From IMG/VR virus record IMGVR_UViG_3300042350_004528, positions 234,834 to 298,833 of that record: a stretch of DNA of 64,000 nt; one strand, given 5' to 3'. A model generated the notes under the pieces. It was given only the letters and a program-made list of their open reading frames with translations. It made no database searches and was not told the DNA's origin. Positions 1 through 33,539 of the stretch are shown one piece after another. How positions within the stretch are numbered: the stretch's first letter is position 1; each line of letters opens with the position of its first letter. A program made the translations under genes and the position numbers.

Positions 1-984
1 TTTATACTCACCAGGCGCATCGGATAATTGTTCTTCTCTACCACAAATAATATCAACTGGATCACCAGAGTCAGGACGAATTACTAACTTACCGTCACGA
101 GCCATGATAGCTTCTTTGTTTGCTGGTAAGTATTCAGTAATCAACTTCCACAAATCAAATGTGTCAGATACAATTGATAGGATTCCATTCGGAAAATCTA
201 CCAACCAATCGGCAATCATTTGTTGTTCACCAACAGTAAAGATTTTTGTTGTTGATACAGAGTGTTCAGATGCGTTAACCGAGTTAATGCACACTTCGTC
301 TTTTGGTTCATTATAGAAATAACGAGCCCCTGGAATACAGATGATTGTATCTGAACCACGGAACGATGTTGCATGTCCCATTCCACTAGTCAACATATCC
401 CATGGTGATAAACCACGTGCTGAAAAGTCATGACACATAAAAGGAATTAACCAAGCTGTTGATGGGTCGGTTTTCATAACCCACTCAACAACATTACGTT
501 TGTATTGCAATGCTATTGTTGCTGATGTGGATGGTTTCCAAGCCAACGAACTGATAATTGTTTCCAAATACAATGTCAACCACGCAAACCCATCGACAGT
601 ATTGATGAAAGTCATGTGTGGAACATTTGGGTTTGTTTCAATACCTTCAGGTAGTGCTTTAACACGAATAGGTAAGTAACCTAATCTGTGTAGTGCAACG
701 AAGTGTGATGCATCGTAATCCATTCCAAGATACAATGACATATCTTTTCCAAAGTTAACCGCAACTTCCTCGGGTAAACTGAAAAAGTTCTCTTGAAATT
801 CATCATGTAACCATTTAACAACCAATTGTTGTCCGAATGAAACGATTTTTGACACGCCTTTAGGTGCATACTTAACACTACGTGGAATCCATGTGCCGTA
901 CAAACGGGTGGTTCCAGGAGCTAACATTTTCTTGTGACCGATCTTATATCCGTCAGTGTAAAATAAACTTGTTGGTTTGAACAT
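1..984 (-). CDS. Nicotinamide phosphoribosyltransferase-like protein (NAMPT / NARP1 Namat-like), 3' end truncated by the window edge
   Basis: Hand translation from ATG at 984: MFKPTSLFYTDGYKIGH...HDFSARG...ASEHSV...SIVSDTFDLW...LVIRPDSGDPVDIICG; NAMPT motifs; frame open to position 1 (absent from ORF track). Confidence 0.9.
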   Translation of the reverse strand, partial: MFKPTSLFYTDGYKIGHKKMLAPGTTRLYGTWIPRSVKYAPKGVSKIVSFGQQLVVKWLHDEFQENFFSLPEEVAVNFGKDMSLYLGMDYDASHFVALHRLGYLPIRVKALPEGIETNPNVPHMTFINTVDGFAWLTLYLETIISSLAWKPSTSATIALQYKRNVVEWVMKTDPSTAWLIPFMCHDFSARGLSPWDMLTSGMGHATSFRGSDTIICIPGARYFYNEPKDEVCINSVNASEHSVSTTKIFTVGEQQMIADWLVDFPNGILSIVSDTFDLWKLITEYLPANKEAIMARDGKLVIRPDSGDPVDIICGREEQLSDAPGEYK

Positions 985-1003
985 AATAATTATTATTTTG
1001 GGG

Positions 1004-1975
1004 TTAAAATACGTTTAATTGTTTAACTAATGAGTGAATTGTTTTGTGCCTTGAAAGCGTGTCAACGATAGTTCCGTCTTGAACATCCTTCACACTATTT
1101 GTTGTGTAGATACCATCAAAATATTCACTTAGGAAATCAAACCCAGCGCTGAAGATGCCATGAGTAACTATCAAATAGTTTTTACCGTGGTGTTTTGGGT
1201 GAACAGTACTTGATATTTTTCTGGCATCATTGACAGCTTTAGCGATTTCAATGAATGTTCTACCACCATCGCAGATGTCATCAATAATGAAAATATCTTT
1301 GTCGGCATCGTTTACTGAAATTGGTACGTTAGTGTAATCAATCTTACCAGTTTCAATATTACGATGTTTTGATGCGATGATAACTTCATGTCTATATTTG
1401 AGTTGTTCAGCACAATGAAACACTTTTTTCAAAGCACCAGCATCGGGTGATACTAAACGTACACCATCGAAATTCATGGAGTCCCAAATTTCAAATCCTT
1501 TTGATAAAAAGTAATCTTTAAATGCGAAATAAAGTAAAACGGTATTGTCCCGTTTCTCAAAGTTATTGATGCATGCCTCAAGAACATCTGAGTGTGGGTC
1601 AAGGACTGTTACCTTTTCGTAACCCTGTGAGTTAATGATTGGTGCGATTACGTTCTTAACATAATTGATACCACCTTCCGTAAACTTACGGTCGCTTCTA
1701 GCACCCATACAATAAGGAATGTAAAGACGAATACGATTAACACCAACCTCTTTTAACGCTTGTGTTGCACAGATAATAATTTCCAAATCCTGGAATGTAT
1801 TTAAACGAGATTTGATTGTTATACCTTGCGAATTATCTTTAAGTGAACAAAAGGTATTGTATCCATTTTCAACCAATCTCAATGATTGTTGTCCATCGGG
1901 AAAACGACTAATCTCATATTTGAATGATAGCTTATCGTTATCGTTATGGTTAACTAAATTTAAAAGTTCCGCCAT
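1004..1975 (-). CDS. Ribose-phosphate pyrophosphokinase-like protein (PRS / NARP1 Adps-like)
   Basis: Motifs RFPDGQ, YIPYCMGARSDR, LDPHSD, VSPDAGA, IIDDICDGGRTF, VTHGIFS. Confidence 0.9.
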   Translation of the reverse strand: MAELLNLVNHNDNDKLSFKYEISRFPDGQQSLRLVENGYNTFCSLKDNSQGITIKSRLNTFQDLEIIICATQALKEVGVNRIRLYIPYCMGARSDRKFTEGGINYVKNVIAPIINSQGYEKVTVLDPHSDVLEACINNFEKRDNTVLLYFAFKDYFLSKGFEIWDSMNFDGVRLVSPDAGALKKVFHCAEQLKYRHEVIIASKHRNIETGKIDYTNVPISVNDADKDIFIIDDICDGGRTFIEIAKAVNDARKISSTVHPKHHGKNYLIVTHGIFSAGFDFLSEYFDGIYTTNSVKDVQDGTIVDTLSRHKTIHSLVKQLNVF

Positions 1976-2000
1976 TTTTTTATTTTCTTTAAATGTTGTA

Positions 2001-2008
2001 CAAAGATA
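2001..2008 (-). promoter_or_regulatory. Bacteroidota-type sigma-A -7 element TAnnTTTG (representative copy)
   Basis: TATCTTTG on the minus strand upstream of 1975. The motif recurs in intergenic gaps upstream of minus-strand genes, e.g. 5240-5247, 9383-9390, 28924-28931, 30975-30982, 40535-40542, 46195-46202, 46295-46302, 63870-63877. Confidence 0.8.
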
Positions 2009-2032
2009 AGTTAAAATTTTTAAACCACCAAA

Positions 2033-2542
2033 TTATTTAATTTTTCCAATGATATCCAACATTCTTTCGAGTTGTGGATTCTTGTGGGCTGTGGACTCAT
2101 TTAAATTTGAAGTGCCCTTGGAGATGTTAACTGGTGCTATGTTCGCACCGCTACTGAGTAAGTCTTGTAATTCACTATCCGATAATTTTTCAGCATCTAT
2201 TTCTACAAATGTACGTGGGTCATACCTTCTACCACGAAAAGATATTGGTCTATCGTAAGACTGTTGATATGCTGTACTTGCGAATGGCATCATGGACGTC
2301 CCATTATTACCAATAGTTTCAGATCTAACCATGGTTGTTGCCCCAGTTAAAATATCACCACTAGTGCCAGTTTTTTTACTTATGAACTCCTGTGACGCAG
2401 CGCTAGTTTGCTTTGGGTTATTGTTCTTTATTTTTATCGCAGATACAGTTTCGTGATTTATAGTTGCACTCGAACTCTTGGGTTCGCCAGTTTGATTTAT
2501 CAACTTGATAAATTTTGCAAGTAATCTAAAAAGAATATTCAT
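2033..2542 (-). CDS. Hypothetical protein
   Basis: 169-aa ORF, co-oriented. Confidence 0.6.
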   Translation of the reverse strand: MNILFRLLAKFIKLINQTGEPKSSSATINHETVSAIKIKNNNPKQTSAASQEFISKKTGTSGDILTGATTMVRSETIGNNGTSMMPFASTAYQQSYDRPISFRGRRYDPRTFVEIDAEKLSDSELQDLLSSGANIAPVNISKGTSNLNESTAHKNPQLERMLDIIGKIK

Positions 2543-2650
2543 TTAATCTCTATCAAAAAATGTTGTAAATACCGATAAAATAAAAATACAAACGACAATA
2601 CCAATAACTATTATCGCTGTGACTTGAGCTGCTGGGTGTAAACTTTCCAT
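2543..2650 (-). CDS. Small single-TM membrane protein (35 aa)
   Basis: Hand translation MESLHPAAQVTAIIVIGIVVCIFILSVFTTFFDRD*; fills the gap between neighbours. Confidence 0.55.
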   Translation of the reverse strand: MESLHPAAQVTAIIVIGIVVCIFILSVFTTFFDRD

Positions 2651-2662
2651 ATTATTAATTTT

Positions 2663-3217
2663 TTAATTATCAAACCAAACTATCATTCTAGAAACATAAC
2701 CATTTTCCTCAAAGGTTTTCATGGCCGATAGCAAAACCACATACTCAATAGGTGCACCAAAATCATACTCAGATGATGAGCAATATTTAGTGTAGCGATT
2801 GATTGCGGTTTCAAATTCTTTTGTGGTTAACCAAGTGTGTGAGTGCCAATCAGGATGTTCGACCCAACAAGGTTTATCATTTCTGTCCTTGATTATTTTA
2901 AGACGACCACTCTCAGCCCATCTCATCGCAGTTTCTAATGTAACGCTATTCTCAGATGGCGAATCACTTATGTAACAAACAGAATCGTTCCTCGAATAGT
3001 AACCAAGTTCCTCAAATGGTGGTAATCCTTTAGGTAATAATCCATTTTTATGATTGGATCTAACACCCTGTGAGATAAAGCCAAACATATCATAGTTTCT
3101 ACCTGGATTAATGGCACCAGCAAAATCACGCCAATATGCTGGTTTACCAGTTTTTTTAGCTTCTTTTAATTCTTCTTTTGTGGTGTACTCAAGGTACATA
3201 TGAATATCACATCCCAT
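2663..3217 (-). CDS. Conserved phage hypothetical protein (MGCDIH...HSHTWLT family)
   Basis: MGCDIH start, RNYDMFG, GLP, HSHTWLT, C-terminal VWFDN; pattern typical of phage proteins. Confidence 0.7.
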   Translation of the reverse strand: MGCDIHMYLEYTTKEELKEAKKTGKPAYWRDFAGAINPGRNYDMFGFISQGVRSNHKNGLLPKGLPPFEELGYYSRNDSVCYISDSPSENSVTLETAMRWAESGRLKIIKDRNDKPCWVEHPDWHSHTWLTTKEFETAINRYTKYCSSSEYDFGAPIEYVVLLSAMKTFEENGYVSRMIVWFDN

Positions 3218-3232
3218 ATTATTTTCTATTAG

Positions 3233-3306
3233 TGGGCCCTGCTGGGTTCGAACCAGCGACCACCTGATTATGAGTCAGACGCTCTAACCGACTGAGCTAA
3301 GGGCCC
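3233..3306 (-). tRNA. tRNA CAT, Ile2-like (lysidine type)
   Basis: GGGCCCT acceptor, TCTGA-CTCATAA-TCAGG anticodon arm, body resembles bacterial ileX; no encoded CCA. Confidence 0.85.
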
Positions 3307-3336
3307 TAATTTTATACAAAGATAGTAATTAATTTT

Positions 3337-3840
3337 TTATTTTCCAAATCCAGTATCGGTAAAAAATCTGAGCGTCTCGGCCATAAATGTATTTGTATCA
3401 AAATTTGGGTCGAATGTTAAATTATCATCCACAATAATATTATCATCCTCATCAACTTTATATTGGTACATTTCAAAACTGTTTGGGGTAGTTTTTATAG
3501 GATCAACTTTAATAATATCACCCTCAAATTGAACCCCACATAGTTCACAAAAATGTACAACTTTATAACTATTCGTATCAGGCATTGGGATTAGAATGTC
3601 TTTATGTGTTAAACTCATCGCCTTTGAACCATCTTCATTTGTGTGATTGCAACTCAATTTTATCTCATAAATTTGTTTTTCATACGAAGTTATGTGATTA
3701 TTTTTCGATTCGATTAAAATATCAACTTTTTTCTTGAGCTCTCGTTCAATGGAGTTTAGATCTCGAGTAACCTTTTCTTTATTAATCTCAAGTTCGATTA
3801 TTTTTTTACGGCCCTCTATAAACGGATTCTTTGATTCCAT
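3337..3840 (-). CDS. Hypothetical protein (coiled coil + CxH...CxxC)
   Basis: 167-aa ORF. Confidence 0.6.
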   Translation of the reverse strand: MESKNPFIEGRKKIIELEINKEKVTRDLNSIERELKKKVDILIESKNNHITSYEKQIYEIKLSCNHTNEDGSKAMSLTHKDILIPMPDTNSYKVVHFCELCGVQFEGDIIKVDPIKTTPNSFEMYQYKVDEDDNIIVDDNLTFDPNFDTNTFMAETLRFFTDTGFGK

Positions 3841-3845
3841 AAAGA

Positions 3846-4280
3846 TTAACCATTTGTATTTTTTAATTCTAATTCATAATATTTTACCATCAGAGATGCG
3901 CTGGCATAATTGGTGGCAAGTGGTATGTTATGTACATTACATATCCTCAAAAGCATGCTCACATCCACCTGATGTGGGTGGGCTTCAAGTGGGTCGATGA
4001 AAAAAACAACACCGTCAATTTTACCGTTAACAATCATAGATGCTATCTCCGCATCACCACCGTAAGGCCCAGAGTTTAACTTGGTTACATTCGTCAAACC
4101 AGCGTGTTCAACGTGTTTACCTGTGGTTCCAGTAGCATATATGTTTACGTTGTTTTTAAAGAAATCGAGACGTTTCATAATGAATGAGACCATATCCGCT
4201 TTCTTACCATCATGTGCGATAATAGCAACATTAAGTTTTTTCCGATTCTCTTTGTCAGCTAAAAATTTATTCAACAACAT
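3846..4280 (-). CDS. mgsA: Methylglyoxal synthase
   Basis: IAHDGKK, ATGTTG, SGPYGGD, FFIDPL, HPHQVDV, PLATN motifs. Confidence 0.95.
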   Translation of the reverse strand: MLLNKFLADKENRKKLNVAIIAHDGKKADMVSFIMKRLDFFKNNVNIYATGTTGKHVEHAGLTNVTKLNSGPYGGDAEIASMIVNGKIDGVVFFIDPLEAHPHQVDVSMLLRICNVHNIPLATNYASASLMVKYYELELKNTNG

Positions 4281-4282
4281 AA

Positions 4283-4804
4283 TTAAAATTTAATTCTAAG
4301 ACCCATTTTTTGCATAGCCAATAATGCCTCGGCGTTACCCATAGCATCATCAACGGGATTGTGAGTATGTTTTGTTTTTCTATACAAACGTTTCCACTCC
4401 TGGTTCTTACTAGCATCCTTAACCAAACCACAATACAAATCACCGATACGTCTGCCAGAAAACCCGAATGGGTTTCTACCGCAGTACTTATGCATGTACC
4501 AGTTAATCCACTGCCAATCAAAGGCTAAGTTATCGCTGATAAAGGTTGGTTTACCTTCGGAATTTTTAACTAACCATTTTTCGAACTCGCTCATAACCTC
4601 ATATGGTTCCCCAAACTGTTCATGCTCAGACCTTGAAAACCCACTGACAGCTAACGCATCTGGTTTGTATTGATCAGTTAATGGTCTGATCTTACCATAA
4701 AACGTTTTTGATGTGTCGGACACTTTAACAACACCGAAACATACAATTGAATGTGTACCAACTAATTCACCATCAGCCTCAACATCCACTACAAAATAAC
4801 TCAT
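4283..4804 (-). CDS. DEDDh 3'-5' exonuclease (RNase AS/Rv2179c-like)
   Basis: VDVEADG, SDNLAFDW, HTHNPVDDA. Confidence 0.8.
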   Translation of the reverse strand: MSYFVVDVEADGELVGTHSIVCFGVVKVSDTSKTFYGKIRPLTDQYKPDALAVSGFSRSEHEQFGEPYEVMSEFEKWLVKNSEGKPTFISDNLAFDWQWINWYMHKYCGRNPFGFSGRRIGDLYCGLVKDASKNQEWKRLYRKTKHTHNPVDDAMGNAEALLAMQKMGLRIKF

Positions 4805-5235
4805 ATCTTTACTAATTTTTTAATTTCTCTGTCAATATCGCGCTTTTTAATTGTCTCGCGTTTATCGTAATTCTTTTTACCCCTAGCAATAGCGATTCTA
4901 CATTTTATCTTACCAGAACCATTCAAGTAAAACCAAAACGGAACGATTGTTAAACCTTTTGTCAAACTGTTCTGAATCTTTCGGATTTCTGTTCTGTGTA
5001 AAAGTAATTTTTTATCACGATTCTCATCATGACCAAAAAATTCGCTATTTGTGGTTATTTTAAAATTTTTGATGAACATTTCGTCATCCTTGATATAGCA
5101 AAACGCATCAACTATGCTAATTTTACCATCCTTAATTGCTTTAACTTCAGAGCCAAAAAGAATAATACCAGCCTCATACTCTTGAAGGTATTCATAATCA
5201 AATTTTGCTTTTCTATTTGTAACTAAAGTTTTCAC
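4801..5235 (-). CDS. smpB: SsrA-binding protein SmpB
   Basis: NRKAKFDY, EAGIILFGSEVK, RDKKLLLH, GKKNYDKRETIKKRD. Confidence 0.95.
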   Translation of the reverse strand: MKTLVTNRKAKFDYEYLQEYEAGIILFGSEVKAIKDGKISIVDAFCYIKDDEMFIKNFKITTNSEFFGHDENRDKKLLLHRTEIRKIQNSLTKGLTIVPFWFYLNGSGKIKCRIAIARGKKNYDKRETIKKRDIDREIKKLVKI

Positions 5236-5321
5236 AATACAAATATAGTAAATGATTTGAATAAAAACAAAAAAACCCCGTAATTTTTTACGGGGTTTAG
5301 TTTATTCGATGATACGCTCGA

Positions 5322-5957
5322 TTAAAAGTAAGTTTGTTCGAAATACAATACTTCAAATTTGTTCTCTTCGTTAATTAATTCAATTGCATTAATTAAATCA
5401 TTATATTCAACGACAGATTCTTTTTGACCAGTTCTATAAGTTTGTAAGAAATCAAATGTAGTTAAGTCATTCCCGAATAGTTTTGAAGATGTTGTGTTGT
5501 ACTTCATCATCAAACCTAACTCTAACTTATAAGCTTCTCTAACTATCTCACATAATCCAGAGAAAGTTCTCTTAGTATCAACTGATGGTATAGTTGGGAT
5601 AATATTAAATCCAACCATATACTCTTGTAACCCTTTAGCGTGTACTAATTCGGTATCAGCCTCAGCGTCAAAGAAAGCGCCAGCTTTTTTATAGTTTCTA
5701 TCGTGACACCAGTTAGCGGCGTTTCTATAAAAATAATGGGCTTCATATTCATCGGCAATTCTACTAGTCAATTCAGCGACAGTTTCGCCAGGTAAGTTAT
5801 ACAACATTTGGCCCTCATCTTCCATCGGTTCAACGGAAACAGCAACGGGGGTGACATCTTCAGCATCTGGTGTCATTGTAACCTCAGCCTCAGGTAATTT
5901 ATTATCCCTTGCAATGTTCATAATCTTACTTTTCATTTCTTCTTTTGTAACATTCAT
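5322..5957 (-). CDS. ftnA: Ferritin with acidic N-terminal extension
   Basis: EYEAHYFY, FFDAEADTELVHA, EAYKLE, Q...E ferroxidase-type pattern. Confidence 0.8.
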   Translation of the reverse strand: MNVTKEEMKSKIMNIARDNKLPEAEVTMTPDAEDVTPVAVSVEPMEDEGQMLYNLPGETVAELTSRIADEYEAHYFYRNAANWCHDRNYKKAGAFFDAEADTELVHAKGLQEYMVGFNIIPTIPSVDTKRTFSGLCEIVREAYKLELGLMMKYNTTSSKLFGNDLTTFDFLQTYRTGQKESVVEYNDLINAIELINEENKFEVLYFEQTYF

Positions 5958-6002
5958 GATTAAATCTTTTACATAAATAGTTTGATTTTATAATAAATCC
6001 CC

Positions 6003-10737: not shown

Positions 10738-10764
10738 ACCACAAATATAATCAAAATTTTTTAA

Positions 10765-11388
10765 TTACAAAACTTTAATGACATTTTCTGGACTAATTGC
10801 ATGATAATTAGTGCCAACCGTTATTATCTTAATCCCATCAATCTCCATAATAATAGGTTTTGGGGCATCGTTTGATAAAATCATTAACTCGGAATCATGG
10901 GTGTAGCCACACTCAACCAAAGCGGTTGTTAGCCTATGAATAATATAAACGCTGAGGTAATAATCTAAAACTTTCATATGGTAATTATAATCAAGCTCCT
11001 TTTTACCCGTCATACTACCCTGTCCGCTACCATCACATTCTTTACAATCAACAATACTCTCGCAACATTCGCACTCAATCTTACCATCACCATCACATGC
11101 ATAACAATCATCGTATTCATCAATCATTGGAACCGTGTTCAACTTAGTAATTAAATCACCTAATTTTACTGGTACATTATTATCCAGTTTCTGGTTCTTT
11201 AATACAAATGAAAAATCTGGCATACCATCGGTTTTAATTGTGATCTCATCATCTGGTATTTGCTCTTTTGGTACCATAATTAAAAGTCGAGAGTCTGTTG
11301 CGCAATAATAATCTTCGTACTCAAAATACGCATTTAGTTTGTCCGCTGCAAACATTTTAGCTGCATCTAGTAATTTAATCTTACTCAT
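10765..11388 (-). CDS. Hypothetical protein with DnaJ-type Cys-rich zinc finger
   Basis: CYACDGDG...CECC...CKECDGSG; start placed at MSKIK. Confidence 0.65.
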   Translation of the reverse strand: MSKIKLLDAAKMFAADKLNAYFEYEDYYCATDSRLLIMVPKEQIPDDEITIKTDGMPDFSFVLKNQKLDNNVPVKLGDLITKLNTVPMIDEYDDCYACDGDGKIECECCESIVDCKECDGSGQGSMTGKKELDYNYHMKVLDYYLSVYIIHRLTTALVECGYTHDSELMILSNDAPKPIIMEIDGIKIITVGTNYHAISPENVIKVL

Positions 11389-12970: not shown

Positions 12971-13268
12971 ATGTCAACCATGGTTTTTTTTGTTGGGTGT
13001 TTAGTGCCTCAACTATCTTATTATAATTTTCTTCATAAAATCTTTCACCGTCTTCCGAATTTGCCCAAAATAGAAATCCTGGTTCAGTCTGCGTCCTCCC
13101 CAGGATTTCTTTTGTTGCTCTTCTATCTTTTTTAAGAAATGAAATACTAACATAGTTCAGTATAAACTTCCCATCAGTCTTTGACCAATACGCCAGTTGG
13201 CCAAATTTTTGTTTGTTCTTTACTCTGGCATTTTCAATAATCTCTATTAAAAATTTAACATTTCCCAT
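12930..13268 (-). CDS. Hypothetical protein
   Basis: 112-aa ORF. Confidence 0.5.
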   Translation of the reverse strand: MGNVKFLIEIIENARVKNKQKFGQLAYWSKTDGKFILNYVSISFLKKDRRATKEILGRTQTEPGFLFWANSEDGERFYEENYNKIVEALNTQQKKPWLTYEYEIKKPEQKEE

Positions 13269-14650
13269 TAACTAGATTCTTCCATATCAACCACACCCGA
13301 GTCTTTAACTATACCCTCAAGAACCTTAAACTCAAAAGATTTGTGTTTGTAAATTCTAGGTACCAGACCAGATTCTAATCTGACACATACACCCTCACGG
13401 ATATGGGTATCATCGAGCATTGATTTACCTTTAGAATAAATATCAACAAGTTCAGTAATCTTGTCATTAAAATCCCTATCACCGTTTATACTTGGATAGG
13501 TTAATTCCATTTCAATTCTTCTGAAACGTGTTATCTCTGGAACATGTTTTACACCTATCTCATTACATCTTTTAACAACATCATCCCAAGTGTAATCAAC
13601 TGATTGGCCATCTGGGTTGGTCATTGTCATACGGTACACATAAAAGTCTTGTTGGGCTGTCGAACAACCATATGAGTAAACCATGTGCTTTTTATCGCCC
13701 ATGTTGGAATACTGTTTCGTGAATTCCTTATCACCCATTTTACTTGTATCAACAGATGGCATGATTGGCGTATTCTCATTCTCATAACCAACAATCTCAA
13801 GATAAACAGTCTCACCTTTTCTTAGATTACCTTTGAAAAGAGCGAAAGCTTTATCTCTTATGGTTGGATCATGGAATTGGGTTGCATTTGATTTAGCCTC
13901 CTCCAAAACAACTCTGCGTGTACCAGTTAAATAAGCCCATTCAGTCTCGTTTATCTTGATACCAAGCTTAATCAATAATCTTTCAAACCAATTTAAATCA
14001 CGGTCAACCAACACATGCCCAACTCTATGAGAAGTTCCGTGTAGTTTTTCTGTGATGACAACCAAATCCTCACGATTTATTTGATGTACATTCTTACCAA
14101 AATGTTCGGTATCAATATGTTCCTTGAACATAACCGAAGTTTTTGCCACTCTGGTTTTTTTACCTTGGTTTTGTTGAGCGGCTTTTATTGTGTTCGGGTT
14201 GATGTACTTATTACAAATTGGTACACCACCCCATTCATCAATCTCAAGACCCTCATCAACCAGACCAGTCACATAAATGAAACCAAAACTGTGTAATGGT
14301 GTCCAGAAACCATCTGAGATTTCCCCACGAAATCTCTGGGCCCTAACCCTACGGTTATCATCAAACATACCAGCTTTATCATCTGGGAATTTGTTCTTTG
14401 TTTTATCTCGATATAAGTTATTCGCATGGCAAAACTCATGAGATAACTGACCATCACATGGGAAGTATACCCCCCAATGATCTTCTTTGCAATCTAAACC
14501 AACCACCACTTGATTACCGTGGCATGTCGCTAATTGCACCTTATCCGCATTAGGATGCGGTCTAACGTTTTTAAGTTTTGTTACTATTCCTTTATACATA
14601 TTTTTTACTTTGATTCTACCATTACGTAAGTACCCTCTACCATACCCCAT
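13268..14650 (-). CDS. ATP-dependent RNA ligase with N-terminal OB/tRNA-binding-like domain (DRB0094/Rnl5-like)
   Basis: N-terminal HPNADKVQ...FPCDGQL, motif I TEKLHGTS, REGVCVR, YKHKSFEF. Confidence 0.8.
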   Translation of the reverse strand: MGYGRGYLRNGRIKVKNMYKGIVTKLKNVRPHPNADKVQLATCHGNQVVVGLDCKEDHWGVYFPCDGQLSHEFCHANNLYRDKTKNKFPDDKAGMFDDNRRVRAQRFRGEISDGFWTPLHSFGFIYVTGLVDEGLEIDEWGGVPICNKYINPNTIKAAQQNQGKKTRVAKTSVMFKEHIDTEHFGKNVHQINREDLVVITEKLHGTSHRVGHVLVDRDLNWFERLLIKLGIKINETEWAYLTGTRRVVLEEAKSNATQFHDPTIRDKAFALFKGNLRKGETVYLEIVGYENENTPIMPSVDTSKMGDKEFTKQYSNMGDKKHMVYSYGCSTAQQDFYVYRMTMTNPDGQSVDYTWDDVVKRCNEIGVKHVPEITRFRRIEMELTYPSINGDRDFNDKITELVDIYSKGKSMLDDTHIREGVCVRLESGLVPRIYKHKSFEFKVLEGIVKDSGVVDMEESS

Positions 14651-14886: not shown

Positions 14887-14985
14887 ATTATTTTTATTAA
14901 GGTACAAAGATAGTGATTATTTTTTTAATTCGCAAATAAAAAAACCCCACAGAGGGGGTTTTTTAAAAAAAAATTCATATTAAAT

Positions 14986-21393: not shown

Positions 21394-21557
21394 ACCTTAT
21401 TTTTCAACAAAGATACGCAAATATTTTTAATTCGCAAATTTTTTTGTAAAATTAGGGTATTTATGATTAAAAAGCGGTGACAGTTTGTCAGTAAGCATAA
21501 AATTAAATCTAACACATATGGACAGTGAGAGTTATAGGAGTGAAAAAAAGAGTGACA

Positions 21558-23978: not shown

Positions 23979-26063
23979 ATGGCACAAAAAGTATCATATA
24001 CAGGGGTTTTCTTGGACAAGGATTCAAGAGCCGTATTAGAAAAAGAGTTCAAATCGCAGGTTCCTGATGGATGGGAGTGGATTGCGCATCATATGACCAT
24101 AACTTTAGGGGAAATGGTTGATAAATCGGAATTGGGTAAACAAGTTGCCCTTAATATAGTTTCATTTGGTAAAGATGATAAAGTCATGGCAATTGGTGTC
24201 AAGGGTTACCCTAGTAAAAATGAAAAACCGCACATTACTTTAGCCGTTAATCGCGCTGAGGGTGGTAAACCTTATATGAGTAATTTAATTAAGGAATGGG
24301 TACCATACTCGATCGGTGCCATATTAACTGGTGTTGTCAGTGAATACCCGCCACAATCTAAAGAAACACTTAATGAAGCTTATGATATTAAATCATTACC
24401 GTTCTATAACGATGTTATCAATAAAAACGGTAAAATATATCAGGTTGGTGGGGCTGTTAGAGATTTGTATCTGGGTAAACAATCTAAAGACCTTGACATC
24501 GTTATTAGTGGAATACCAGCTAAGGAACTCGAAGATGTGTTGAAAAAATATGGTAAAGTTGATATGGTTGGTGCGTCATTTGGTGTTATTAAGTTCACAC
24601 CACCAGATGGTGAAGAAATTGATATTGCAATACCAAGAACTGAAAAGAAGAGTGGTGTTGGTTATCAGGGTTTTGATGTGTCGGCTGATCACACTCTCCC
24701 TATCGAAAAGGATCTTGAGAGAAGAGATTTCACAATAAATTCAATCGCTAAAGATAGTGATGGGAATGTTATTGATCCATTCGGTGGGTTAAAGGATCTT
24801 GATTCGAAGGTTATCAAATTAACAAACCCTAAGGCTTTTTCAGATGACCCATTAAGGATGTTAAGGGCGATTCAATTTGCGTCTAGGTTTGGTTTTAAAA
24901 TAGATGAGGAAACGTTTGATGCTATTAAAAAGAATGCGATGACTATTGACGAAATATCAAAAGAGAGAATATTGATAGAGTTTGATAAAATCGTAAACAA
25001 AGGTAATCCCAGAGTCGGAGCTGAGTTATTAGTTTCAAGTGGATTGTACAGGGGCATATTCGGTACCGAGTTTGATGGTGATTTTGAACCGTTTGACCAA
25101 GTAACTAGGAACAGTGAGTTCGCTTACTGGTTGATCCAATCGTTCACCGAACAACCAGACCAATACTATAAGAATATAATGAAAGGTGACATCGATACGG
25201 CTAGAGAGATATCAGCTTTGGCTTATATGTATAACAACTTACCTGGTAACGACAAAGCAAAACAAAGATTTGTTTATTTTAATATAAATAAGATATCACC
25301 ACAGATGTTTAATAGTAATTTCGTGAGAAGTATATTGAGTGATGTTATCAATGACTTTGATTCTCAAAAATACCCAGCTGGTTATTCGGATTTAAAAGTC
25401 AATGGTAATGATTTAATGGCAATGGGTTTAAAAGGTAAAGCTGTTGGTGATATGTTAAATAAATTAATCTCTGCAATATATTCTGATAAAATTGAAAATA
25501 CAAAGAATGGTTTGTTGGGTTTTGTTGAGAGGAATAAGGATATGTTAAATGAATCTGTTGGTGGTACAAATAAGAATAGAGTTGTGTTTTATGATTTTGA
25601 TGGTACTTTAATGGATAGTCCACTTCCTGACACAGGTAAACAAATCTATAAAGAAAAAACTGGTAATGTATACCCACATCAAGGTTGGTGGGGTCGTGCT
25701 GAGAGTTTGGATTTAAATGTCTTCGACATAAAAACAAATCCAGATGTTGAGGCTAAATTTAGAGCTGACTCATCGGATCCAAATACGCATGTTGTTTTAT
25801 TAACCAATAGGTTGTCAAAACTTGAGGAACCAATTAAAAAAGTTCTTGACAAACATAATATGGTATTCGATTTTTATTCTTTTAAAAATGATGGTCGTGA
25901 AAAGGGTGAACGTGTTTTGGATATTTTAGCCAAAGTATATCCGAATACGAATGAAATTGAATTTTATGATGACGATGAGCGACACATTCAAAATGTAAGA
26001 GATAATTTAATCGACACCGATTACGATTTCAAGGTGAATCAAGTTATTGATGGTAGATTATAA
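23979..26063 (+). CDS. Three-domain RNA end-repair protein: 2H phosphoesterase + CCA-adding/poly(A)-pol-type nucleotidyltransferase + HAD phosphatase
   Basis: HHMT and PHIT (2H); VGGAVRD...DLDIV, RRDFTINS, DDPLRMLRA (class II NTase); FYDFDGTL...LLTNR...FYDD (HAD). Confidence 0.85.
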   Translation: MAQKVSYTGVFLDKDSRAVLEKEFKSQVPDGWEWIAHHMTITLGEMVDKSELGKQVALNIVSFGKDDKVMAIGVKGYPSKNEKPHITLAVNRAEGGKPYMSNLIKEWVPYSIGAILTGVVSEYPPQSKETLNEAYDIKSLPFYNDVINKNGKIYQVGGAVRDLYLGKQSKDLDIVISGIPAKELEDVLKKYGKVDMVGASFGVIKFTPPDGEEIDIAIPRTEKKSGVGYQGFDVSADHTLPIEKDLERRDFTINSIAKDSDGNVIDPFGGLKDLDSKVIKLTNPKAFSDDPLRMLRAIQFASRFGFKIDEETFDAIKKNAMTIDEISKERILIEFDKIVNKGNPRVGAELLVSSGLYRGIFGTEFDGDFEPFDQVTRNSEFAYWLIQSFTEQPDQYYKNIMKGDIDTAREISALAYMYNNLPGNDKAKQRFVYFNINKISPQMFNSNFVRSILSDVINDFDSQKYPAGYSDLKVNGNDLMAMGLKGKAVGDMLNKLISAIYSDKIENTKNGLLGFVERNKDMLNESVGGTNKNRVVFYDFDGTLMDSPLPDTGKQIYKEKTGNVYPHQGWWGRAESLDLNVFDIKTNPDVEAKFRADSSDPNTHVVLLTNRLSKLEEPIKKVLDKHNMVFDFYSFKNDGREKGERVLDILAKVYPNTNEIEFYDDDERHIQNVRDNLIDTDYDFKVNQVIDGRL

Positions 26064-28078: not shown

Positions 28079-28138
28079 ACTTCTTTATTTTATTATAAAT
28101 AGTATGAGATAAATAAAAGTAATAAAAAATTAGATTTG

Positions 28139-28209
28139 AGCTGGTAGTTGGAATCGAACCAATCTCTATAAGTTTTGCAGACTTATTGCACTCCATGTAC
28201 ATTACCAGC
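28139..28209 (-). tRNA. tRNA-Cys(GCA)
   Basis: TAAGT-CTGCAAA-ACTTA, U73. Confidence 0.85.
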
Positions 28210-28216
28210 ATATTAG

Positions 28217-28287
28217 CACGGGTGGAAGGATTCGAACCTCCATCGCTGGTTTTGGAGACCAGCATTCTACCATTGAAATACACCCGT
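28217..28287 (-). tRNA. tRNA-Trp(CCA)
   Basis: CTGGT-CTCCAAA-ACCAG. Confidence 0.9.
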
Positions 28288-28293
28288 ATATTG

Positions 28294-28363
28294 TGGACAC
28301 AGTGGGAATCGAACCCAAACGATCTCCTTGCAAGGGAGTCGACCTGCCTTCGGTATCTGGCCC
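28294..28363 (-). tRNA. tRNA-Ala(TGC), atypical
   Basis: CTCC-CTTGCAA-GGAG, G3:U70 kept, irregular acceptor and D arm. Confidence 0.7.
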
Positions 28364-28366
28364 ATA

Positions 28367-28453
28367 TGGCGGAGAGCGGAGTACTCGAAACTCATACCCG
28401 AAAGTACCACTCGCTTAGCAGGCGGTGACAGCACCCTGGCTGTGTCACTCTCC
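28367..28453 (-). tRNA. tRNA-Ser(GCT), atypical, CCA encoded
   Basis: CGC-CTGCTAA-GCG, long variable arm, G73, 5-bp D-stem. Confidence 0.75.
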
Positions 28454-28458
28454 ATTTG

Positions 28459-28534
28459 TCGGGAAAGCTGGATTCGAACCAGCGATCTCTCGCGTCCAAG
28501 GCGAGCGAGGATGACCTGACTCCTCCATTTCCCG
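28459..28534 (-). tRNA. tRNA-Pro(TGG)
   Basis: CTCGC-CTTGGAC-GCGAG, C1-G72, A73. Confidence 0.9.
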
Positions 28535-28539
28535 TTTTG

Positions 28540-28612
28540 TAGGGTAGACAGGGTTCGAACCTGCGACCCCGTGCTCCCAAAGCACGTGCGCTACCAACTG
28601 CGCTACTACCCT
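28540..28612 (-). tRNA. tRNA-Pro(TGG), second copy
   Basis: CGTGC-TTTGGGA-GCACG, A1-U72. Confidence 0.9.
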
Positions 28613-28619
28613 ATGTTTG

Positions 28620-28705
28620 TCGGAGTGGAGGGATTCGAACCCCCTGAGTTTCCAATGTGCCAGATTTACAGTCTGGTGCCCATCCGCCGTCTGAGCAGCA
28701 CTCCG
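28620..28705 (-). tRNA. tRNA-Tyr(GTA)
   Basis: CCAGA-CTGTAAA-TCTGG, long variable arm, C1-G72. Confidence 0.9.
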
Positions 28706-28720
28706 AAATGATATAAAACA

Positions 28721-28752
28721 AAAAACCCTGAGATTTTGTCCCAGGGCTTCTA
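28721..28752 (-). terminator. Intrinsic terminator of attenuator A
   Basis: CCCTGGGA-CAAAA-TCTCAGGG followed by a U tract; its 5' arm (TAGAAGCCCTG) is complementary to 28801-28811 in the leader ORF. Confidence 0.85.
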
Positions 28753-28785
28753 CTATTTTATATAATTAGTTTCCAAAAAAAATCG

Positions 28786-28884
28786 TTAACTAAAAGACAA
28801 TAGAAGCCCTGTTCCAGCTGGATATGCTGGAGCTGCTGGACAACTATACGGCCATGCCACGATATTTTTGTTCAAATTTTTCAT
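28786..28884 (-). CDS. Leader peptide A (32 aa) MKNLNKNIVAWPYSCPAAPAYPAGTGLLLSFS
   Basis: Hand translated; codons 10-23 are all Ala/Trp/Pro/Tyr/Ser(AGT)/Cys, the species in the downstream array. Confidence 0.8.
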   Translation of the reverse strand: MKNLNKNIVAWPYSCPAAPAYPAGTGLLLSFS

Positions 28885-28985
28885 TTTGTCTTTATAAATA
28901 GTGTGTTCTTTTAAAAAGTGATACAAATATAAGCACAGTTTTTTAAATAAGCAAGTTTTTTTAAAAATTAATCATAAATTTCTGT

Positions 28986-29029
28986 TATATCGGTCATGTG
29001 ATACAAATATATCGGTCATGTGATACAAA
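28986..29029. repeat. 22-bp tandem duplication
   Basis: TATATCGGTCATGTGATACAAA x2. Confidence 0.9.
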
Positions 29030-29051
29030 CCAGGCGCTTACCACTCACAAT

Positions 29052-29129
29052 TGGGGCGAACGATGAGGTTCGAACTCACGACCTCCTGAACCACAATCAG
29101 GCGCTCTAACCAACTGAGCTACGTCCGCC
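29052..29129 (-). tRNA. tRNA-His(GTG) with encoded G-1, C73 and CCA
   Basis: CCTGA-TTGTGGT-TCAGG. Confidence 0.92.
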
Positions 29130-29139
29130 ATGTAATCCC

Positions 29140-29982
29140 CTACCTGTTGGTGGGGATTAAGTTATTTAAATATTCTCTATTTTGAGTAAAGATTGGTGTT
29201 TCGACATCCAATTCCCAAGCGCTTCTGGTGTAAACATCCTTTGGATCAATCACAACCGTATCACGATTGACTTCCGCATTGGCACTTTTACGAACAAACG
29301 TCTTTTCAATTTTTCTGATTATACCACCACGTTTTTCTCTTGGTGAGTAATCATTCCAATTTGTACCAGCCTGAAATATCAATTCTTGCATACCATCGGT
29401 CTTAACCCCATGTAATTGTTTTGGTGAGTATAAACTCTGAGCGACCGATGAAATTGAATTTCTGGTCGCATCTTGTTGTCTCCAGATGAAATAATTCTCA
29501 ACCTCAACTTTTTGTGGGATTTGAAATACCCTGGCATCAAACATAGCCAATTTAGGTTCGCTGGCGTATCTTTTATCCGTCACAGACTTTCTCTCGATAA
29601 CATGTAGATTCTTAATATAACGATCCATTCTCAATTTATTAAAGATGGCTGTTGCCATTGAGGCTGAAACGCTCGCCATTTTCTGTAAGTTATTATCGAA
29701 CCAAGCTTGTGTGCCCTCATCTTCAAAATCGGTGATCAAAATTGAAATCTCATCTGATTGCACATACGCAAACTTAGCACCCATAATGTTTTTACATAGA
29801 TATGCCGCTGTCTCATCCATATCATCAATCAAATCCAAATCAAATGGCCTTCTCAAACCTTTTGTATAGGTGTGAAAAGCCTTACCATCAATTCTGATAA
29901 TGGTGTAACCTCTTCTTGGTAATGAAATACGAGTTCTATCCTCATAGTTCGATTTCATTCTGTCTCCTAATGCGTCTTTCAT
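29140..29982 (-). CDS. thg1: Thg1-like tRNA(His) guanylyltransferase / 3'-5' polymerase
   Basis: RIDGKAFHTYT, YVQSDEIS, FDARVF, WRQQDATRNSIS. Confidence 0.92.
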   Translation of the reverse strand: MKDALGDRMKSNYEDRTRISLPRRGYTIIRIDGKAFHTYTKGLRRPFDLDLIDDMDETAAYLCKNIMGAKFAYVQSDEISILITDFEDEGTQAWFDNNLQKMASVSASMATAIFNKLRMDRYIKNLHVIERKSVTDKRYASEPKLAMFDARVFQIPQKVEVENYFIWRQQDATRNSISSVAQSLYSPKQLHGVKTDGMQELIFQAGTNWNDYSPREKRGGIIRKIEKTFVRKSANAEVNRDTVVIDPKDVYTRSAWELDVETPIFTQNREYLNNLIPTNR

Positions 29983-30413
29983 TTTATTTCTTGGTTAATT
30001 TTATATTCTTCTTCTGTTGCTATTCTAATTGGTACGAACAGCGCATACCCATCATCATCCTCAAAATGGTTACAATCGTCTTCATAAGTCATATTAAACT
30101 TAGTTCGATTGTAGATGAACTTGTTTTGTTTGACATCCCATTTTGCTATGGTGGCTCTCCTATGATCACCCGCATAAAACTGACCGTCAACCAAATTTTT
30201 TTTCTGAATAGCCCCAGCGCCAATTAATTTTGGTACATAAAAGTTATTCCACTCATCAGTTTCAACTCGTGGTAATTCGGGTATATCATTAACACCAGCG
30301 AATGGTTTTAATGTCTCCCAATATTCACGAATACGTTGTTCCCTTTCAGCTTTTTCAATTTCTCGTTTAGCTTTCAGTTCAGCGAATATCATATCTTTAT
30401 CAATCTGTTCCAT
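29979..30413 (-). CDS. Hypothetical protein
   Basis: 144-aa ORF. Confidence 0.6.
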
Positions 30414-30427
30414 AACAAATCATTTTG

Positions 30428-30512
30428 CGGAGAGGGAGGGATTCGAACCCCCGTTACCTTTCGGTAAAACGGTTTTCAAGACCGCCGCGATCAACCGCTC
30501 TGCCACCTCTCC
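30428..30512 (-). tRNA. tRNA-Ser(TGA)
   Basis: GCGGT-CTTGAAA-ACCGT, long variable arm, G73. Confidence 0.92.
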
Positions 30513-30561
30513 AATATTTCACAAATATAAGAATAAAAATGTTAATTAACAAGTTTATTTT

Positions 30562-30638
30562 TGGTAGGCATGGTAGGACTCGAACCTACGACCTTCTGCG
30601 TATCAGACAGACGCTCTAACCAACTGAGCTACATGCCT
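30562..30638 (-). tRNA. tRNA-Ile(GAT), CCA encoded
   Basis: TCTGT-CTGATAC-GCAGA. Confidence 0.92.
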
Positions 30639-30645
30639 ATATTTG

Positions 30646-30719
30646 TACACCCTGATGGATTCGAACCACCGACCCCCTGCATGTAAGGCAGGTGCTCTAA
30701 CCAACTGAGCTAAGGATGC
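30646..30719 (-). tRNA. tRNA-Val(TAC)
   Basis: CCTGC-CTTACAT-GCAGG. Confidence 0.92.
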
Positions 30720-30725
30720 AAATTG

Positions 30726-30799
30726 TGACCCCATCGGGACTCGAACCCGAAACCTTCGCATTAAAAGTGCGAAGCTCTAACCAATTGAGCTACGAGGTC
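30726..30799 (-). tRNA. tRNA-Lys(TTT)
   Basis: TCGCA-CTTTTAA-TGCGA. Confidence 0.92.
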
Positions 30800-30808
30800 A
30801 TATAAAAC

Positions 30809-30837
30809 AAAAAACCCAGGTGGTTTACCTGGGTTTT
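30809..30837 (-). terminator. Intrinsic terminator of attenuator B
   Basis: AAAACCCAGGT-AAACC-ACCTGGGTTTT + U tract; AACCCAG is complementary to CTGGGTT in leader B (30885-30891). Confidence 0.85.
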
Positions 30838-30862
30838 CTTTTCTAACTCTATGTTCTTTAGT

Positions 30863-30949: not shown

Positions 30950-31022
30950 TTTACTGATTTTTAAATATATAGTGCAAAAGTAAGCAAAGTTTTTTAAATA
31001 TGCAAGTTTTTTCAAAAAAAAA

Positions 31023-33537: not shown

Positions 33538-33539
33538 AA

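What the first reader, a model, noticed from the sequence alone, without database searches (positions are those of the whole stretch)
1..1975. PRS-like gene directly upstream of a NAMPT-like gene: NARP1-type NAD+ reconstitution pair
Established: NARP1 (Adps + Namat) rebuilds NAD+ from ADPR and nicotinamide to defeat NAD-depleting defences (Thoeris, DSR, SIR2-HerA), and its genes are annotated as PRS and NAMPT in this order. Here they are adjacent (19-bp gap) behind one promoter. The alternative is a classical PRPP/NMN salvage pair.
Basis: partly seen in the sequence, partly recalled or inferred. Interest (0 to 1): 0.6.

Follow-up and report, generated by a model that had tools for sequence, protein, structure and literature searches.

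The report
Phage NARP1 NAD-rebuilding gene pair
Two neighbouring genes in an uncultivated 299-kb lake-water phage match, on every sequence test I could run, the known Adps-Namat pair that rebuilds NAD+ from the pieces left by bacterial NAD+-destroying defences, so this is a new member of a known system and not a new kind of system.

Summary
On the minus strand, a 323-aa PRS-like gene (1004-1975) lies 19 bp upstream of a NAMPT-like gene that starts at 984. The window edge cuts that second gene; the full protein is 509 aa.

The NARP1 reading is supported.
- **PRS-like protein:** it falls below the curated cut-offs for true Prs. It sits in the Adps clade with the validated ICP1 Adps, split from housekeeping Prs at 100/99 support. 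It carries the Adps donor loop DDICDGGRTF and the catalytic Lys.
- **NAMPT-like protein:** it matches the solved SpbetaL1 Namat structure at E 3.7e-113, against 1e-43 to 1e-37 for true Nampt. It sits in the Namat clade and carries the Namat clamp motif.
- **One deviation:** Met replaces the usual aromatic at clamp position 7. This Met is fixed in all 120 closest homologs.
- **Other pathways:** the 299-kb genome has no Nmnat, PnuC or Macro gene, so NARP2, NARP3 and NARP1-AP are not encoded.
- **Transcription:** a Bacteroidetes-type promoter motif lies just upstream of the pair and none lies between the genes.

The lineage nests inside chromosomal nrtR-prs-nadV clusters of Bacteroidota. No enzyme activity was tested. 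Verdict: new member of a known kind, of modest interest.

The parts
1004..1975 (-). Adps-like gene (annotated type: ribose-phosphate pyrophosphokinase), 323 aa, P0001
   Evidence: ORF and translation. PRPS fold: AF2 model with pLDDT 87, TM 0.72 to E. coli PRPS at 20% identity. Below the curated Prs cut-offs. In the Adps clade at 100/99 support. Profile scores: 168 bits against phage Adps, 216 against Bacteroidota Adps-like, 48 against housekeeping Prs. PP loop DDICDGGRTF at residues 232-241. The equivalents of ICP1 K185, R87, F92, F18, H121, D161, D212, D213 and D216 are K203, R93, F98, F25, H128, D178, D232, D233 and D236.
1..984 (-). Namat-like gene (annotated type: nicotinamide phosphoribosyltransferase). 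The first 328 of 509 codons are in the window; the gene continues 546 bp beyond the left edge (L001:9455-10984, minus strand).
   Evidence: Match to SpbetaL1 Namat 9W5X/9W5W at E 3.7e-113, against Xcc Nampt at 1e-43 and human NAMPT at 1e-37. In the Namat clade at 100/99. Clamp helix motif GSFTYQMNTRD and clamp loop PRSVKYAPKG, with the catalytic core conserved. The clamp helix motif itself is encoded outside the window.
985..1003 (-). 19-bp intergenic gap with no promoter or terminator motif and no Shine-Dalgarno sequence
   Evidence: Sequence read; scans.
2001..2032 (-). Bacteroidetes-type promoter-like motif (TTTG, 20-nt spacer, TATCTTTG) ending 25 nt before the Adps-like start codon
   Evidence: 16 matches in the window against 6.2 +/- 2.6 expected, with 0 of 100 shuffles reaching 16, and 14 of the 16 on the coding strand; a near-identical 32-mer recurs at L001:9154-9185(-), after the 84-aa ORF that follows the Namat-like gene. 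This is a motif match only; function is inferred.

Best explanation
The two genes are a NARP1 module.

Inferred mechanism: when a host defence (a TIR, SIR2 or SEFIR type effector) cleaves NAD+ into ADP-ribose and nicotinamide, the first enzyme (Adps-like, PRPS fold) uses ATP to pyrophosphorylate the terminal ribose of ADP-ribose, giving ADPR-PP. The second enzyme (Namat-like, Nampt fold) then swaps the pyrophosphate for nicotinamide and returns NAD+ directly. No NMN intermediate and no adenylyltransferase are needed.

The genes are probably co-transcribed from a Bacteroidetes-type promoter just upstream, together with an 84-aa membrane-anchored ORF that follows them.

Shown here: gene structure, homology, clade membership, diagnostic motifs, conserved linkage, and absence of the partner genes of the other pathways. 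Inferred: substrates, products, the counter-defence role and a Bacteroidota host.
For: Adps side:
- Rooted on housekeeping Prs, a 43-row clade (100/99) holds ICP1 Adps (biochemically validated, PMC13586617), Felixounavirus (the genus of Bas63), Kayvirus and Bacillus, mycobacterial and Pseudomonas phage Adps, Bacteroidota paralogues and the window protein.
- Validated members lie on both sides of the basal split, so Adps activity is the parsimonious ancestral state of the clade.
- The donor loop is DDICDGGRTF, identical to Felixounavirus. ICP1 has DDICDGAASF and housekeeping Prs have DD-x-x-DT[GA]GT. DPHSD, SPDAGA and THGIFS also follow the Adps pattern.
- The catalytic Lys and the ADPR contacts are conserved.
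- The model has no long C-terminal helices, consistent with the alpha11-alpha12 loss reported for Adps.
- Profile scores are 168 and 216 bits against Adps profiles and 48 against housekeeping Prs. TIGR01251 is below its cut-off.

Namat side:
- E 3.7e-113 to SpbetaL1 Namat (9W5X, identity confirmed), against 1e-43 or weaker to true Nampt.
- A 32-row Namat clade (100/99) excludes KVP40-like, T4-like and cyanobacterial NadV.
- The clamp helix has Namat spacing and residues, and HDFS-RG and IYGDSIT are Namat-type where Nampt has HDFG-RG and IQGDG. The clamp loop has Lys followed by Tyr, as in ICP1 and the Kayvirus phage.

Context:
- The Adps-then-Namat order recurs in seven reference phages, and the linkage is kept in relatives.
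- The genome has no Nmnat, NatV, PnuC or Macro gene.
Against: - No enzyme assay, and no host or defence system is known for this phage.
- Clamp position 7, the equivalent of SpbetaL1 Tyr396 that stacks on adenine, is Met. It is Met in all 120 closest homologs.
- The immediate sister group, the Bacteroidota chromosomal paralogues next to nrtR, has never been assayed. It was historically read as a dedicated Prs plus NadV (PMC2330246).
- Namat enzymes still make NMN from PRPP in vitro (PMC12774641).
- Two bacterial loci (L075, L085) pair an Adps-like gene with a NadV that lacks the Namat motif, so the pairing alone is not diagnostic.
- The trees use few outgroup sequences, and several phage branches are long.
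- RNA evidence is negligible.
Confidence: 0.78

Rival explanations
1. Classical nicotinamide salvage. The first enzyme is a dedicated PRPP synthetase and the second a Nampt making NMN. A host adenylyltransferase, or NMN deamidase plus the Preiss-Handler route, finishes NAD+.
For: - Both folds and catalytic cores are shared with Prs and Nampt.
- Namat keeps PRPP-to-NMN activity in vitro (PMC12774641).
- Met replaces the adenine-stacking aromatic at clamp position 7.
- The sister bacterial clusters were interpreted this way in 2008.
Against: - P0001 fails the curated Prs thresholds, lacks the DT[GA]GT ribose-5-phosphate loop, and groups with enzymes shown not to act as Prs.
- The second protein groups away from every Nampt tested and from KVP40-type NadV.
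- The phage has no Nmnat. In published surveys 94% of phages with true Nampt do have one.
- The bacteria with the sister cluster already keep a separate housekeeping Prs.
Confidence: 0.08
2. Same NARP1 chemistry, but used mainly as an auxiliary metabolic module captured from a Bacteroidota host. It would recycle ADP-ribose from any NAD+-consuming reaction during a long jumbo-phage infection, and would not be a dedicated counter-defence.
For: - The phage lineage nests inside chromosomal nrtR-linked clusters of Bacteroidota (96/90 and 97/93 support; NrtR domains).
- The genome is rich in other metabolic and RNA-repair genes.
- Published work raises housekeeping roles for bacterial NARP1.
Against: - In every phage tested so far, the module's phenotype is escape from NAD+-depleting defences.
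- ADP-ribose is scarce without such defences.
- The phage did not take the nrtR regulator with the pair.
Confidence: 0.12

Closest known systems
NARP1 of phages SpbetaL1, Bas63 and Fado (Osterman et al. 2024, 10.1101/2024.02.11.579819); Namat structure 9W5X/9W5W (PMC12774641)
   Same: Two-gene Adps-then-Namat operon. The Namat-like protein matches 9W5X at E 3.7e-113 over the full length. It has the same clamp-helix spacing and nearly the same residues, and the same catalytic core. The Adps-like PP loop is identical to that of a Felixounavirus (the genus of Bas63).
   Different: The Adps-like protein is only about 27-36% identical to the reference phage Adps. At 323 aa against about 280, it is longer and has several insertions. 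Clamp position 7 is Met, not Tyr. The clamp loop uses Lys-Tyr where SpbetaL1 has Arg. The host is probably a freshwater Bacteroidota, not Bacillus or E. coli.
Vibrio phage ICP1 Adps (structures and kinetics, PMC13586617) and its Namat
   Same: It is the sister lineage in the Adps tree. The two share 35% (Adps) and 44% (Namat) identity, the same gene order, the DDICDG donor loop and the catalytic Lys, and the same Lys-Tyr clamp loop.
   Different: ICP1 has Ala-Ala-Ser where the window has Gly-Arg-Thr in the PP loop. ICP1 Adps has a shorter C-terminal tail.
Bacterial nrtR-prs-nadV operons (Cytophaga hutchinsonii, Shewanella oneidensis, Acinetobacter ADP1; Rodionov et al. 2008, PMC2330246) and the bacterial NARP1 of Paenibacillus foliorum (PMC12774641)
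   Same: The window pair nests phylogenetically within the Bacteroidota version of this cluster, at 35-43% and 43-48% identity. The PP loop and the clamp-helix motif are the same.
   Different: The phage has no nrtR. The bacterial proteins are about 278 and 485 aa and carry Tyr at clamp position 7. Their chemistry in Bacteroidota is untested.
NARP2 of Vibrio phage KVP40 (NadV plus NatV)
   Same: Same Nampt fold and the same overall goal, NAD+ supply during infection.
   Different: It belongs to a different clade, with 26-31% identity and GMGGG-LLQ in place of the Namat motif. It needs an Nmnat/Nudix partner, which this genome lacks, and it uses PRPP.

Membership tests
NARP1: Adps | Falls in the Adps clade, separate from cellular Prs (Osterman 2024 criterion) | tested here: met
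   IQ-TREE with 50 rows: a 100/99 split between 7 housekeeping Prs and a 43-row clade that holds ICP1 Adps, six other NARP1-context phage Adps, Bacteroidota paralogues and the window protein. Profile scores are 168 and 216 bits against 48.
NARP1: Adps | Namat homolog within ten genes | tested here: met
   It is the next gene downstream, across a 19-bp gap.
NARP1: Adps | Remodelled PP (donor) loop conserved among Adps homologs (ICP1 Cys215-Ser220) | tested here: met
   The window has DDICDGGRTF, ICP1 has DDICDGAASF, Felixounavirus is identical to the window, and housekeeping Prs have DD-x-x-DT[GA]GT.
NARP1: Adps | Catalytic Lys185 and ADPR contacts (F18, R87, F92, H121, D161, D212, D213, D216 of ICP1) | tested here: met
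   All are conserved at aligned positions: K203, F25, R93, F98, H128, D178, D232, D233, D236 (alignment A1). Most are also shared with Prs, so this feature is necessary but does not discriminate.
NARP1: Adps | Loss of the C-terminal alpha11-alpha12 regulatory and filament module of PRPS | tested here: met
   After the last core strand, the AF2 model (pLDDT 87) has only short strands and one 4-residue helix. The tail is 34 aa, against 42-47 aa in housekeeping Prs. This rests on prediction only.
NARP1: Adps | Makes ADPR-PP from ADP-ribose and ATP, and not PRPP from ribose-5-phosphate | not testable with these tools
   Needs purified protein and LC-MS.
NARP1: Namat | Falls in the Namat clade, distinct from the Nampt of NARP2 phages and cells | tested here: met
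   A 32-row clade at 100/99 excludes KVP40-like, T4-like, Serratia BF and cyanobacterial NadV. PDB matches: Namat at E 3.7e-113, Nampt at 1e-43 or weaker.
NARP1: Namat | Clamp helix consensus GS-X-phi-X-phi-X-phi-TRD (PMC12774641) | tested here: met
   GSFTYQMNTRD has the correct spacing: 6 residues between GS and TRD. Thr, Gln and Asn occupy the three phi positions, and Phe is at position 3.
NARP1: Namat | Aromatic residue at clamp-helix position 7 (SpbetaL1 Tyr396, stacks on adenine) | tested here: inconclusive
   The residue is Met here and in 120 of 120 closest homologs. The paper says 'most often aromatic'. Other Namats next to an Adps gene have Cys (Pseudomonas K8), His (mycobacteriophage Calm) or Phe (Kayvirus). 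The Y396K single mutant lost only 1.3-1.7-fold activity.
NARP1: Namat | Clamp loop with Arg, or Lys/Tyr followed by a stacking residue | tested here: met
   The loop is PRSVKYAPKG: Lys at the Arg40 position, followed by Tyr. ICP1, the Kayvirus phage and Bacillus phage SageFayge also have K-Y there.
NARP1: Namat | Nampt-like catalytic core (F189, R192, D215, catalytic His, R306, D308, G360-D361 of SpbetaL1) | tested here: met
   All are conserved in the HMMER alignment to 9W5X.
NARP1: Namat | Prefers ADPR-PP over PRPP and gives NAD+ directly | not testable with these tools
   Needs a competition assay.
NARP2 (Nampt + Nmnat) | KVP40-type Nampt plus an Nmnat or NatV in the same genome | tested here: not met
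   The second protein is in the wrong clade. The only cytidylyltransferase-like gene is a 140-aa heptose-1-phosphate adenylyltransferase-like protein. There is no NatV homolog. The record is rated 100% complete by CheckV.
NARP3 (PnuC + NadR) and NARP1-AP (Macro phosphatase Adpp) | PnuC transporter with NadR; or a Macro-domain gene in the operon | tested here: not met
   The genome has no PF04973 and no PF01661 match.
Canonical ribose-phosphate pyrophosphokinase (Prs) | Reaches the curated family thresholds and has the DT[GA]GT ribose-5-phosphate loop | tested here: not met
   TIGR01251 scores 91.5 bits against a cut-off of 113, and every equivalog model is far below its cut-off. Pfam matches are below gathering. 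The loop reads DGGRT.

The most novel reading that the evidence does not exclude
The pair belongs to a very large lineage of environmental phages. That lineage would have been captured from the chromosomal nrtR-adps-namat cluster of Bacteroidota and then fixed a Met in place of the adenine-stacking Tyr.

If so, NARP1 chemistry is not a phage invention. It would be an ADP-ribose-induced housekeeping NAD+ recycling route of a whole bacterial phylum. NrtR is released from DNA by ADP-ribose, so the pathway would switch on when its substrate appears. This would also answer the question left open in 2008: why bacteria with prs-nadV operons keep a second prs paralog.

A rarer variant is that the Met clamp shifts donor preference to another ADP-ribose derivative.
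Probability: 0.4. Interest if true: 0.55.

Novelty: new member of a known kind. Interest (0 to 1): 0.33.

Why it matters
NARP1 lets a phage neutralise many unrelated NAD+-depleting defences at once (Thoeris, DSR1/2, SIR2-HerA, SEFIR).

- **Wider range:** finding it in a widespread freshwater jumbo phage, probably of Bacteroidota, extends the pathway beyond the Bacillus, enterobacterial, Vibrio and mycobacterial phages in which it was studied. It implies that NAD+ depletion is a relevant defence in lake Bacteroidota.
- **Re-annotation:** PRS and NAMPT genes of this lineage can be re-annotated using the DDICDGG-x-TF loop and the GS[FY]TYQ-x-NTRD motif.
- **Clamp variant:** the fixed Met at a clamp position is a natural variant on which to test the published clamp model.
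- **Origin of NARP1:** the link to NrtR-controlled bacterial clusters bears on where the pathway came from.

Tried and rejected
- **Megablast of 1-6000 against phage records:** found only a 340-nt, 75% match to Tenacibaculum phages PTm1 and PTm5. There is no close cultured relative.
- **Sigma-70 promoter and terminator scans:** no better than shuffles, so I did not use them.
- **The genome search 'relatives' and 'of' with a locus:** I reached bacterial genomes through loci instead.
- **Bas63 accession:** my guess was wrong (MZ501111 is Bas51). A Felixounavirus typing phage served as a proxy. SpbetaL1 Adps could not be fetched, so Bacillus phage SageFayge and a Kayvirus stand in for Firmicutes phages.
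- **ICP1 Adps structure:** not in the PDB copies searched. The fold search therefore only confirms a PRPS fold.
- **The single PF01467 hit:** I considered it as a possible Nmnat and rejected it, because it is heptose-1-phosphate adenylyltransferase-like.
- **The only Nudix domain:** it lies in a 618-aa ParB_N fusion and is not NatV or NrtR.
- **RNA evidence:** metatranscriptome contigs gave one identical 151-nt piece inside the Namat-like gene and two pieces upstream. That is too little to claim transcription.
- **The 84-aa ORF after the Namat-like gene:** no family match and no homolog in related loci.
- **Not run:** the Adps-Namat complex prediction, because published pull-downs show no stable complex and I make no binding claim. 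The large profile search (search of protein representatives) was not needed.
Full report
**What is there**

The window is the last 64 kb of a single 298,833-bp virus record, which CheckV rates 100% complete. Nearly all genes run on the minus strand.
- The PRS-like ORF is 1004-1975(-) and encodes 323 aa (P0001).
- The NAMPT-like ORF starts at 984(-), 19 bp downstream, and is cut by the window edge.
- Read from the whole genome, the second gene encodes 509 aa (L001:9455-10984, minus strand).

An independent lake-water DNA run holds a contig identical over 446-1774, across the junction. Eighteen freshwater or lake runs hold the stretch almost word for word.

**The first protein**

It has a PRPS fold. 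The AF2 model has pLDDT 87, and its best structural matches are E. coli, human and Thermus PRPS at TM about 0.7 and 16-21% identity. It does not qualify as a Prs by any curated model:
- Pfam Pribosyltran and Pribosyltran_N are below gathering.
- TIGR01251 scores 91.5 bits against a cut-off of 113, and all equivalog models are far below theirs.

Homologs occur in more than 1,000 phage records, among them ICP1. The ICP1 enzyme has been shown to make ADPR-PP, and its structure is solved (PMC13586617).

The alignment with ICP1 gives these results:
- The catalytic Lys185 and the ADP-ribose contacts are conserved.
- The donor (PP) loop is the feature that paper offers as an annotation rule. It reads DDICDGGRTF here, DDICDGAASF in ICP1, and is identical to the window in a Felixounavirus. 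Housekeeping Prs have DD-x-x-DT[GA]GT.
- Three further short motifs (DPHSD, SPDAGA, THGIFS) also follow the Adps pattern.

In a maximum-likelihood tree rooted on housekeeping Prs, a 100/99 branch separates those from a clade holding three groups: every NARP1-context phage Adps I fetched, a large set of Bacteroidota paralogues, and the window protein with its metagenomic relatives.

I built profiles without the window's own lineage. They score the window protein at 168 bits (phage Adps), 216 bits (Bacteroidota Adps-like) and 48 bits (housekeeping Prs).

**The second protein**

Against all PDB sequences, its best matches are 9W5X and 9W5W at E 3.7e-113. These are SpbetaL1 Namat. Xanthomonas Nampt scores 1e-43 and human NAMPT 1e-37.

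In the tree, it lies in a 100/99 clade with the Namats of ICP1, Felixounavirus, Kayvirus, Bacillus, mycobacterial and Pseudomonas phages. KVP40-like, T4-like, Serratia BF and cyanobacterial NadV lie outside.

The published Namat signature is the clamp helix GS-X-phi-X-phi-X-phi-TRD.
- The window protein has GSFTYQMNTRD. Nampt-type proteins have GMGGG-LLQ-x-x-RD.
- The clamp loop has Lys followed by Tyr, one of the two described arrangements.
- The one departure is Met at position 7, where SpbetaL1 Tyr396 stacks on adenine.
- This Met is not an accident of one genome. All 120 closest homologs (75-100% identity) have it.
- Other Namats next to an Adps gene carry Cys, His or Phe at that position.

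**Context**

- **Gene order:** Adps then Namat, with a short gap, is the arrangement in ICP1, Kayvirus, Bacillus, Felixounavirus, mycobacterial, Pseudomonas and Shewanella phages.
- **Conserved linkage:** of 14 IMG/VR relatives, 12 have the Namat-like gene downstream within 4 kb. One, a 434.5-kb phage, has it 9 kb away. One contig is too short to tell.
- **No partner genes for other pathways:** the genome has no Nmnat. The single cytidylyltransferase-like hit is heptose-1-phosphate adenylyltransferase-like. There is also no NatV, PnuC or Macro gene. NARP2, NARP3 and NARP1-AP are therefore not encoded.
- **Promoter:** the motif TTTG-N16-22-TAnnTTTG, typical of Bacteroidetes promoters (from my own knowledge), occurs 16 times against 6.2 expected, 14 of them on the coding strand. 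One copy ends 25 nt before the Adps-like start. A nearly identical 32-mer lies after the 84-aa ORF that follows the Namat-like gene.
- **Ribosome binding:** neither gene has a Shine-Dalgarno sequence.
- Co-transcription of the pair is thus plausible but inferred.

**Origin**

A scan of species-representative genomes with the PP-loop pattern gave at least 584 confirmed hits. The best 80 are almost all Bacteroidota chromosomes.
- The Adps-like gene there is usually preceded by NrtR, which has NUDIX plus NrtR winged-helix domains.
- It is followed by a Namat-type gene with the full Tyr-containing motif.
- Five such genomes each also keep a separate housekeeping Prs, at 345-405 bits against 127-153 bits for the paralogue.
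- This is the nrtR-prs-nadV operon noted in 2008, when the purpose of the second prs paralog was left open.
- The window lineage, together with Leptolyngbya phage Lbo-JY46, nests inside this bacterial group in the Adps tree (96/90 and 97/93).

Together with the promoter type and the similarity to a Tenacibaculum phage, this points to a Bacteroidota host and an exchange of the module between host and phage. The direction of that exchange is not settled.

**Verdict**

The pair is best read as NARP1 (confidence 0.78).
- Classical PRPP/NMN salvage remains possible (0.08), because nothing was assayed and Namat enzymes retain PRPP activity.
- A housekeeping use of the same chemistry, as opposed to counter-defence, is a second rival (0.12).
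- The finding is a new member of a known kind. Its points of interest are the fixed Met in the clamp, the enlarged Adps, and the tie to NrtR-linked bacterial clusters.

**Limits**

- The outgroups are small.
- Several phage branches are long.
- Residue equivalences rest on alignments and one predicted model.
- SpbetaL1 and Bas63 Adps themselves could not be included.

Noticed in passing
L033-L112 (bacterial loci), L113-L123: Bacteroidota chromosomes (Pedobacter, Tenacibaculum, Flavobacterium, Aquimarina, Saprospiraceae and others) carry nrtR, Adps-like and Namat-like clusters, plus a separate housekeeping Prs. Of the 80 loci, 55 have the NrtR-like ORF and 49 have a Namat-like gene within 4 kb. 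With ADP-ribose as the NrtR effector, this looks like substrate-induced NARP1 chemistry in bacteria.
   Followed up: partly
L001:9455-10984 (clamp helix, encoded just outside the window) and P0123-P0242: Met replaces the adenine-stacking aromatic at clamp-helix position 7 in all 120 closest homologs (GS[FY]TYQMNTRD). It is a fixed lineage-specific variant of the Namat clamp.
   Followed up: partly
L019:4968-5402, L021:5252-5695, L022:4982-5458 and 5518-5961, L023:7301-7750, L028:4270-4758: Relatives carry extra genes between the Adps-like and Namat-like genes: a conserved ~147-aa HAD-like protein (phrog_1238), a 158-aa phosphatase (phrog_335), a nucleoside 2-deoxyribosyltransferase-like protein, and a GIY-YIG endonuclease. 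A gene annotated 'phosphoheptose isomerase', the name PHROGs gives phrog_1238, also follows Namat in Bacillus phage SageFayge, though I did not compare it with the ~147-aa insert. These may be accessory enzymes like the published Macro phosphatase or RyDEP. None is present in this genome.
   Followed up: partly
L013 (Tenacibaculum phage PTm1, AP019524.1): PTm1 has a Namat-like gene (66% identity, with a deviant motif GSFTLGYQTRD) but no Adps-like gene anywhere in its 224,680 bp. Tenacibaculum chromosomes do carry an Adps-like gene, so the phage enzyme may rely on the host one.
   Followed up: partly
L027 / G086:C1:69493-70392 and 79668-81329: A 434.5-kb phage with direct terminal repeats has the same pair about 9 kb apart. 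Its Namat-like ORF is 568 aa, and the match to it falls in two pieces.
   Followed up: no
L075, L085, L129: A third NadV type (GVGGI-LRNH-SRD, HDFGYRG) sits next to Adps-like genes in a Pedobacter and a Sericytochromatia genome. It branches between the Namat and Nampt clades and may be an intermediate or a differently specific partner.
   Followed up: no
window 2001-2032, 3317-3348, 5240-5271, 10742-10771, 14905-14936, 21408-21438, 39896-39926, 56200-56231, 61632-61662 (minus strand): A Bacteroidetes-type promoter motif with an A-rich spacer recurs upstream of gene starts: 16 found against 6.2 expected. It suggests a Bacteroidota host and marks the transcription units.
   Followed up: partly
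window 3232-3306 and 28138-45861: There are 27 tRNA genes on the minus strand. Alongside them are an RNA ligase (13268-14650), a CCA-adding enzyme fused to a HAD RNA-repair domain (23979-26063, plus strand) and a carbamoyltransferase (31885-33537). This is a large tRNA supply and repair region.
   Followed up: no
window 54508-56181 and 62447-63847: A leucine-rich-repeat protein (557 aa) and a DUF2828/DUF7788 protein (466 aa). Their functions are unknown.
   Followed up: no
L003:100-1956 (G000:C1:181451-183307): A 618-aa fusion of a ParB N-terminal-like domain with a Nudix hydrolase domain. It holds the only Nudix domain in the genome.
   Followed up: no
L001:5752-6777, L001:7267-9129 and L001:9199-9453: Just beyond the window, downstream of the pair, lie an 84-aa ORF with an N-terminal hydrophobic segment (no homologs found), a 620-aa SPFH/Band 7 protein and an adenylosuccinate synthetase-like gene of 341 aa.
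   Followed up: no
window 698-848: A riverine metatranscriptome holds a 151-nt contig identical to part of the Namat-like gene. This is a hint of expression at most, since DNA carry-over is not excluded.
   Followed up: no
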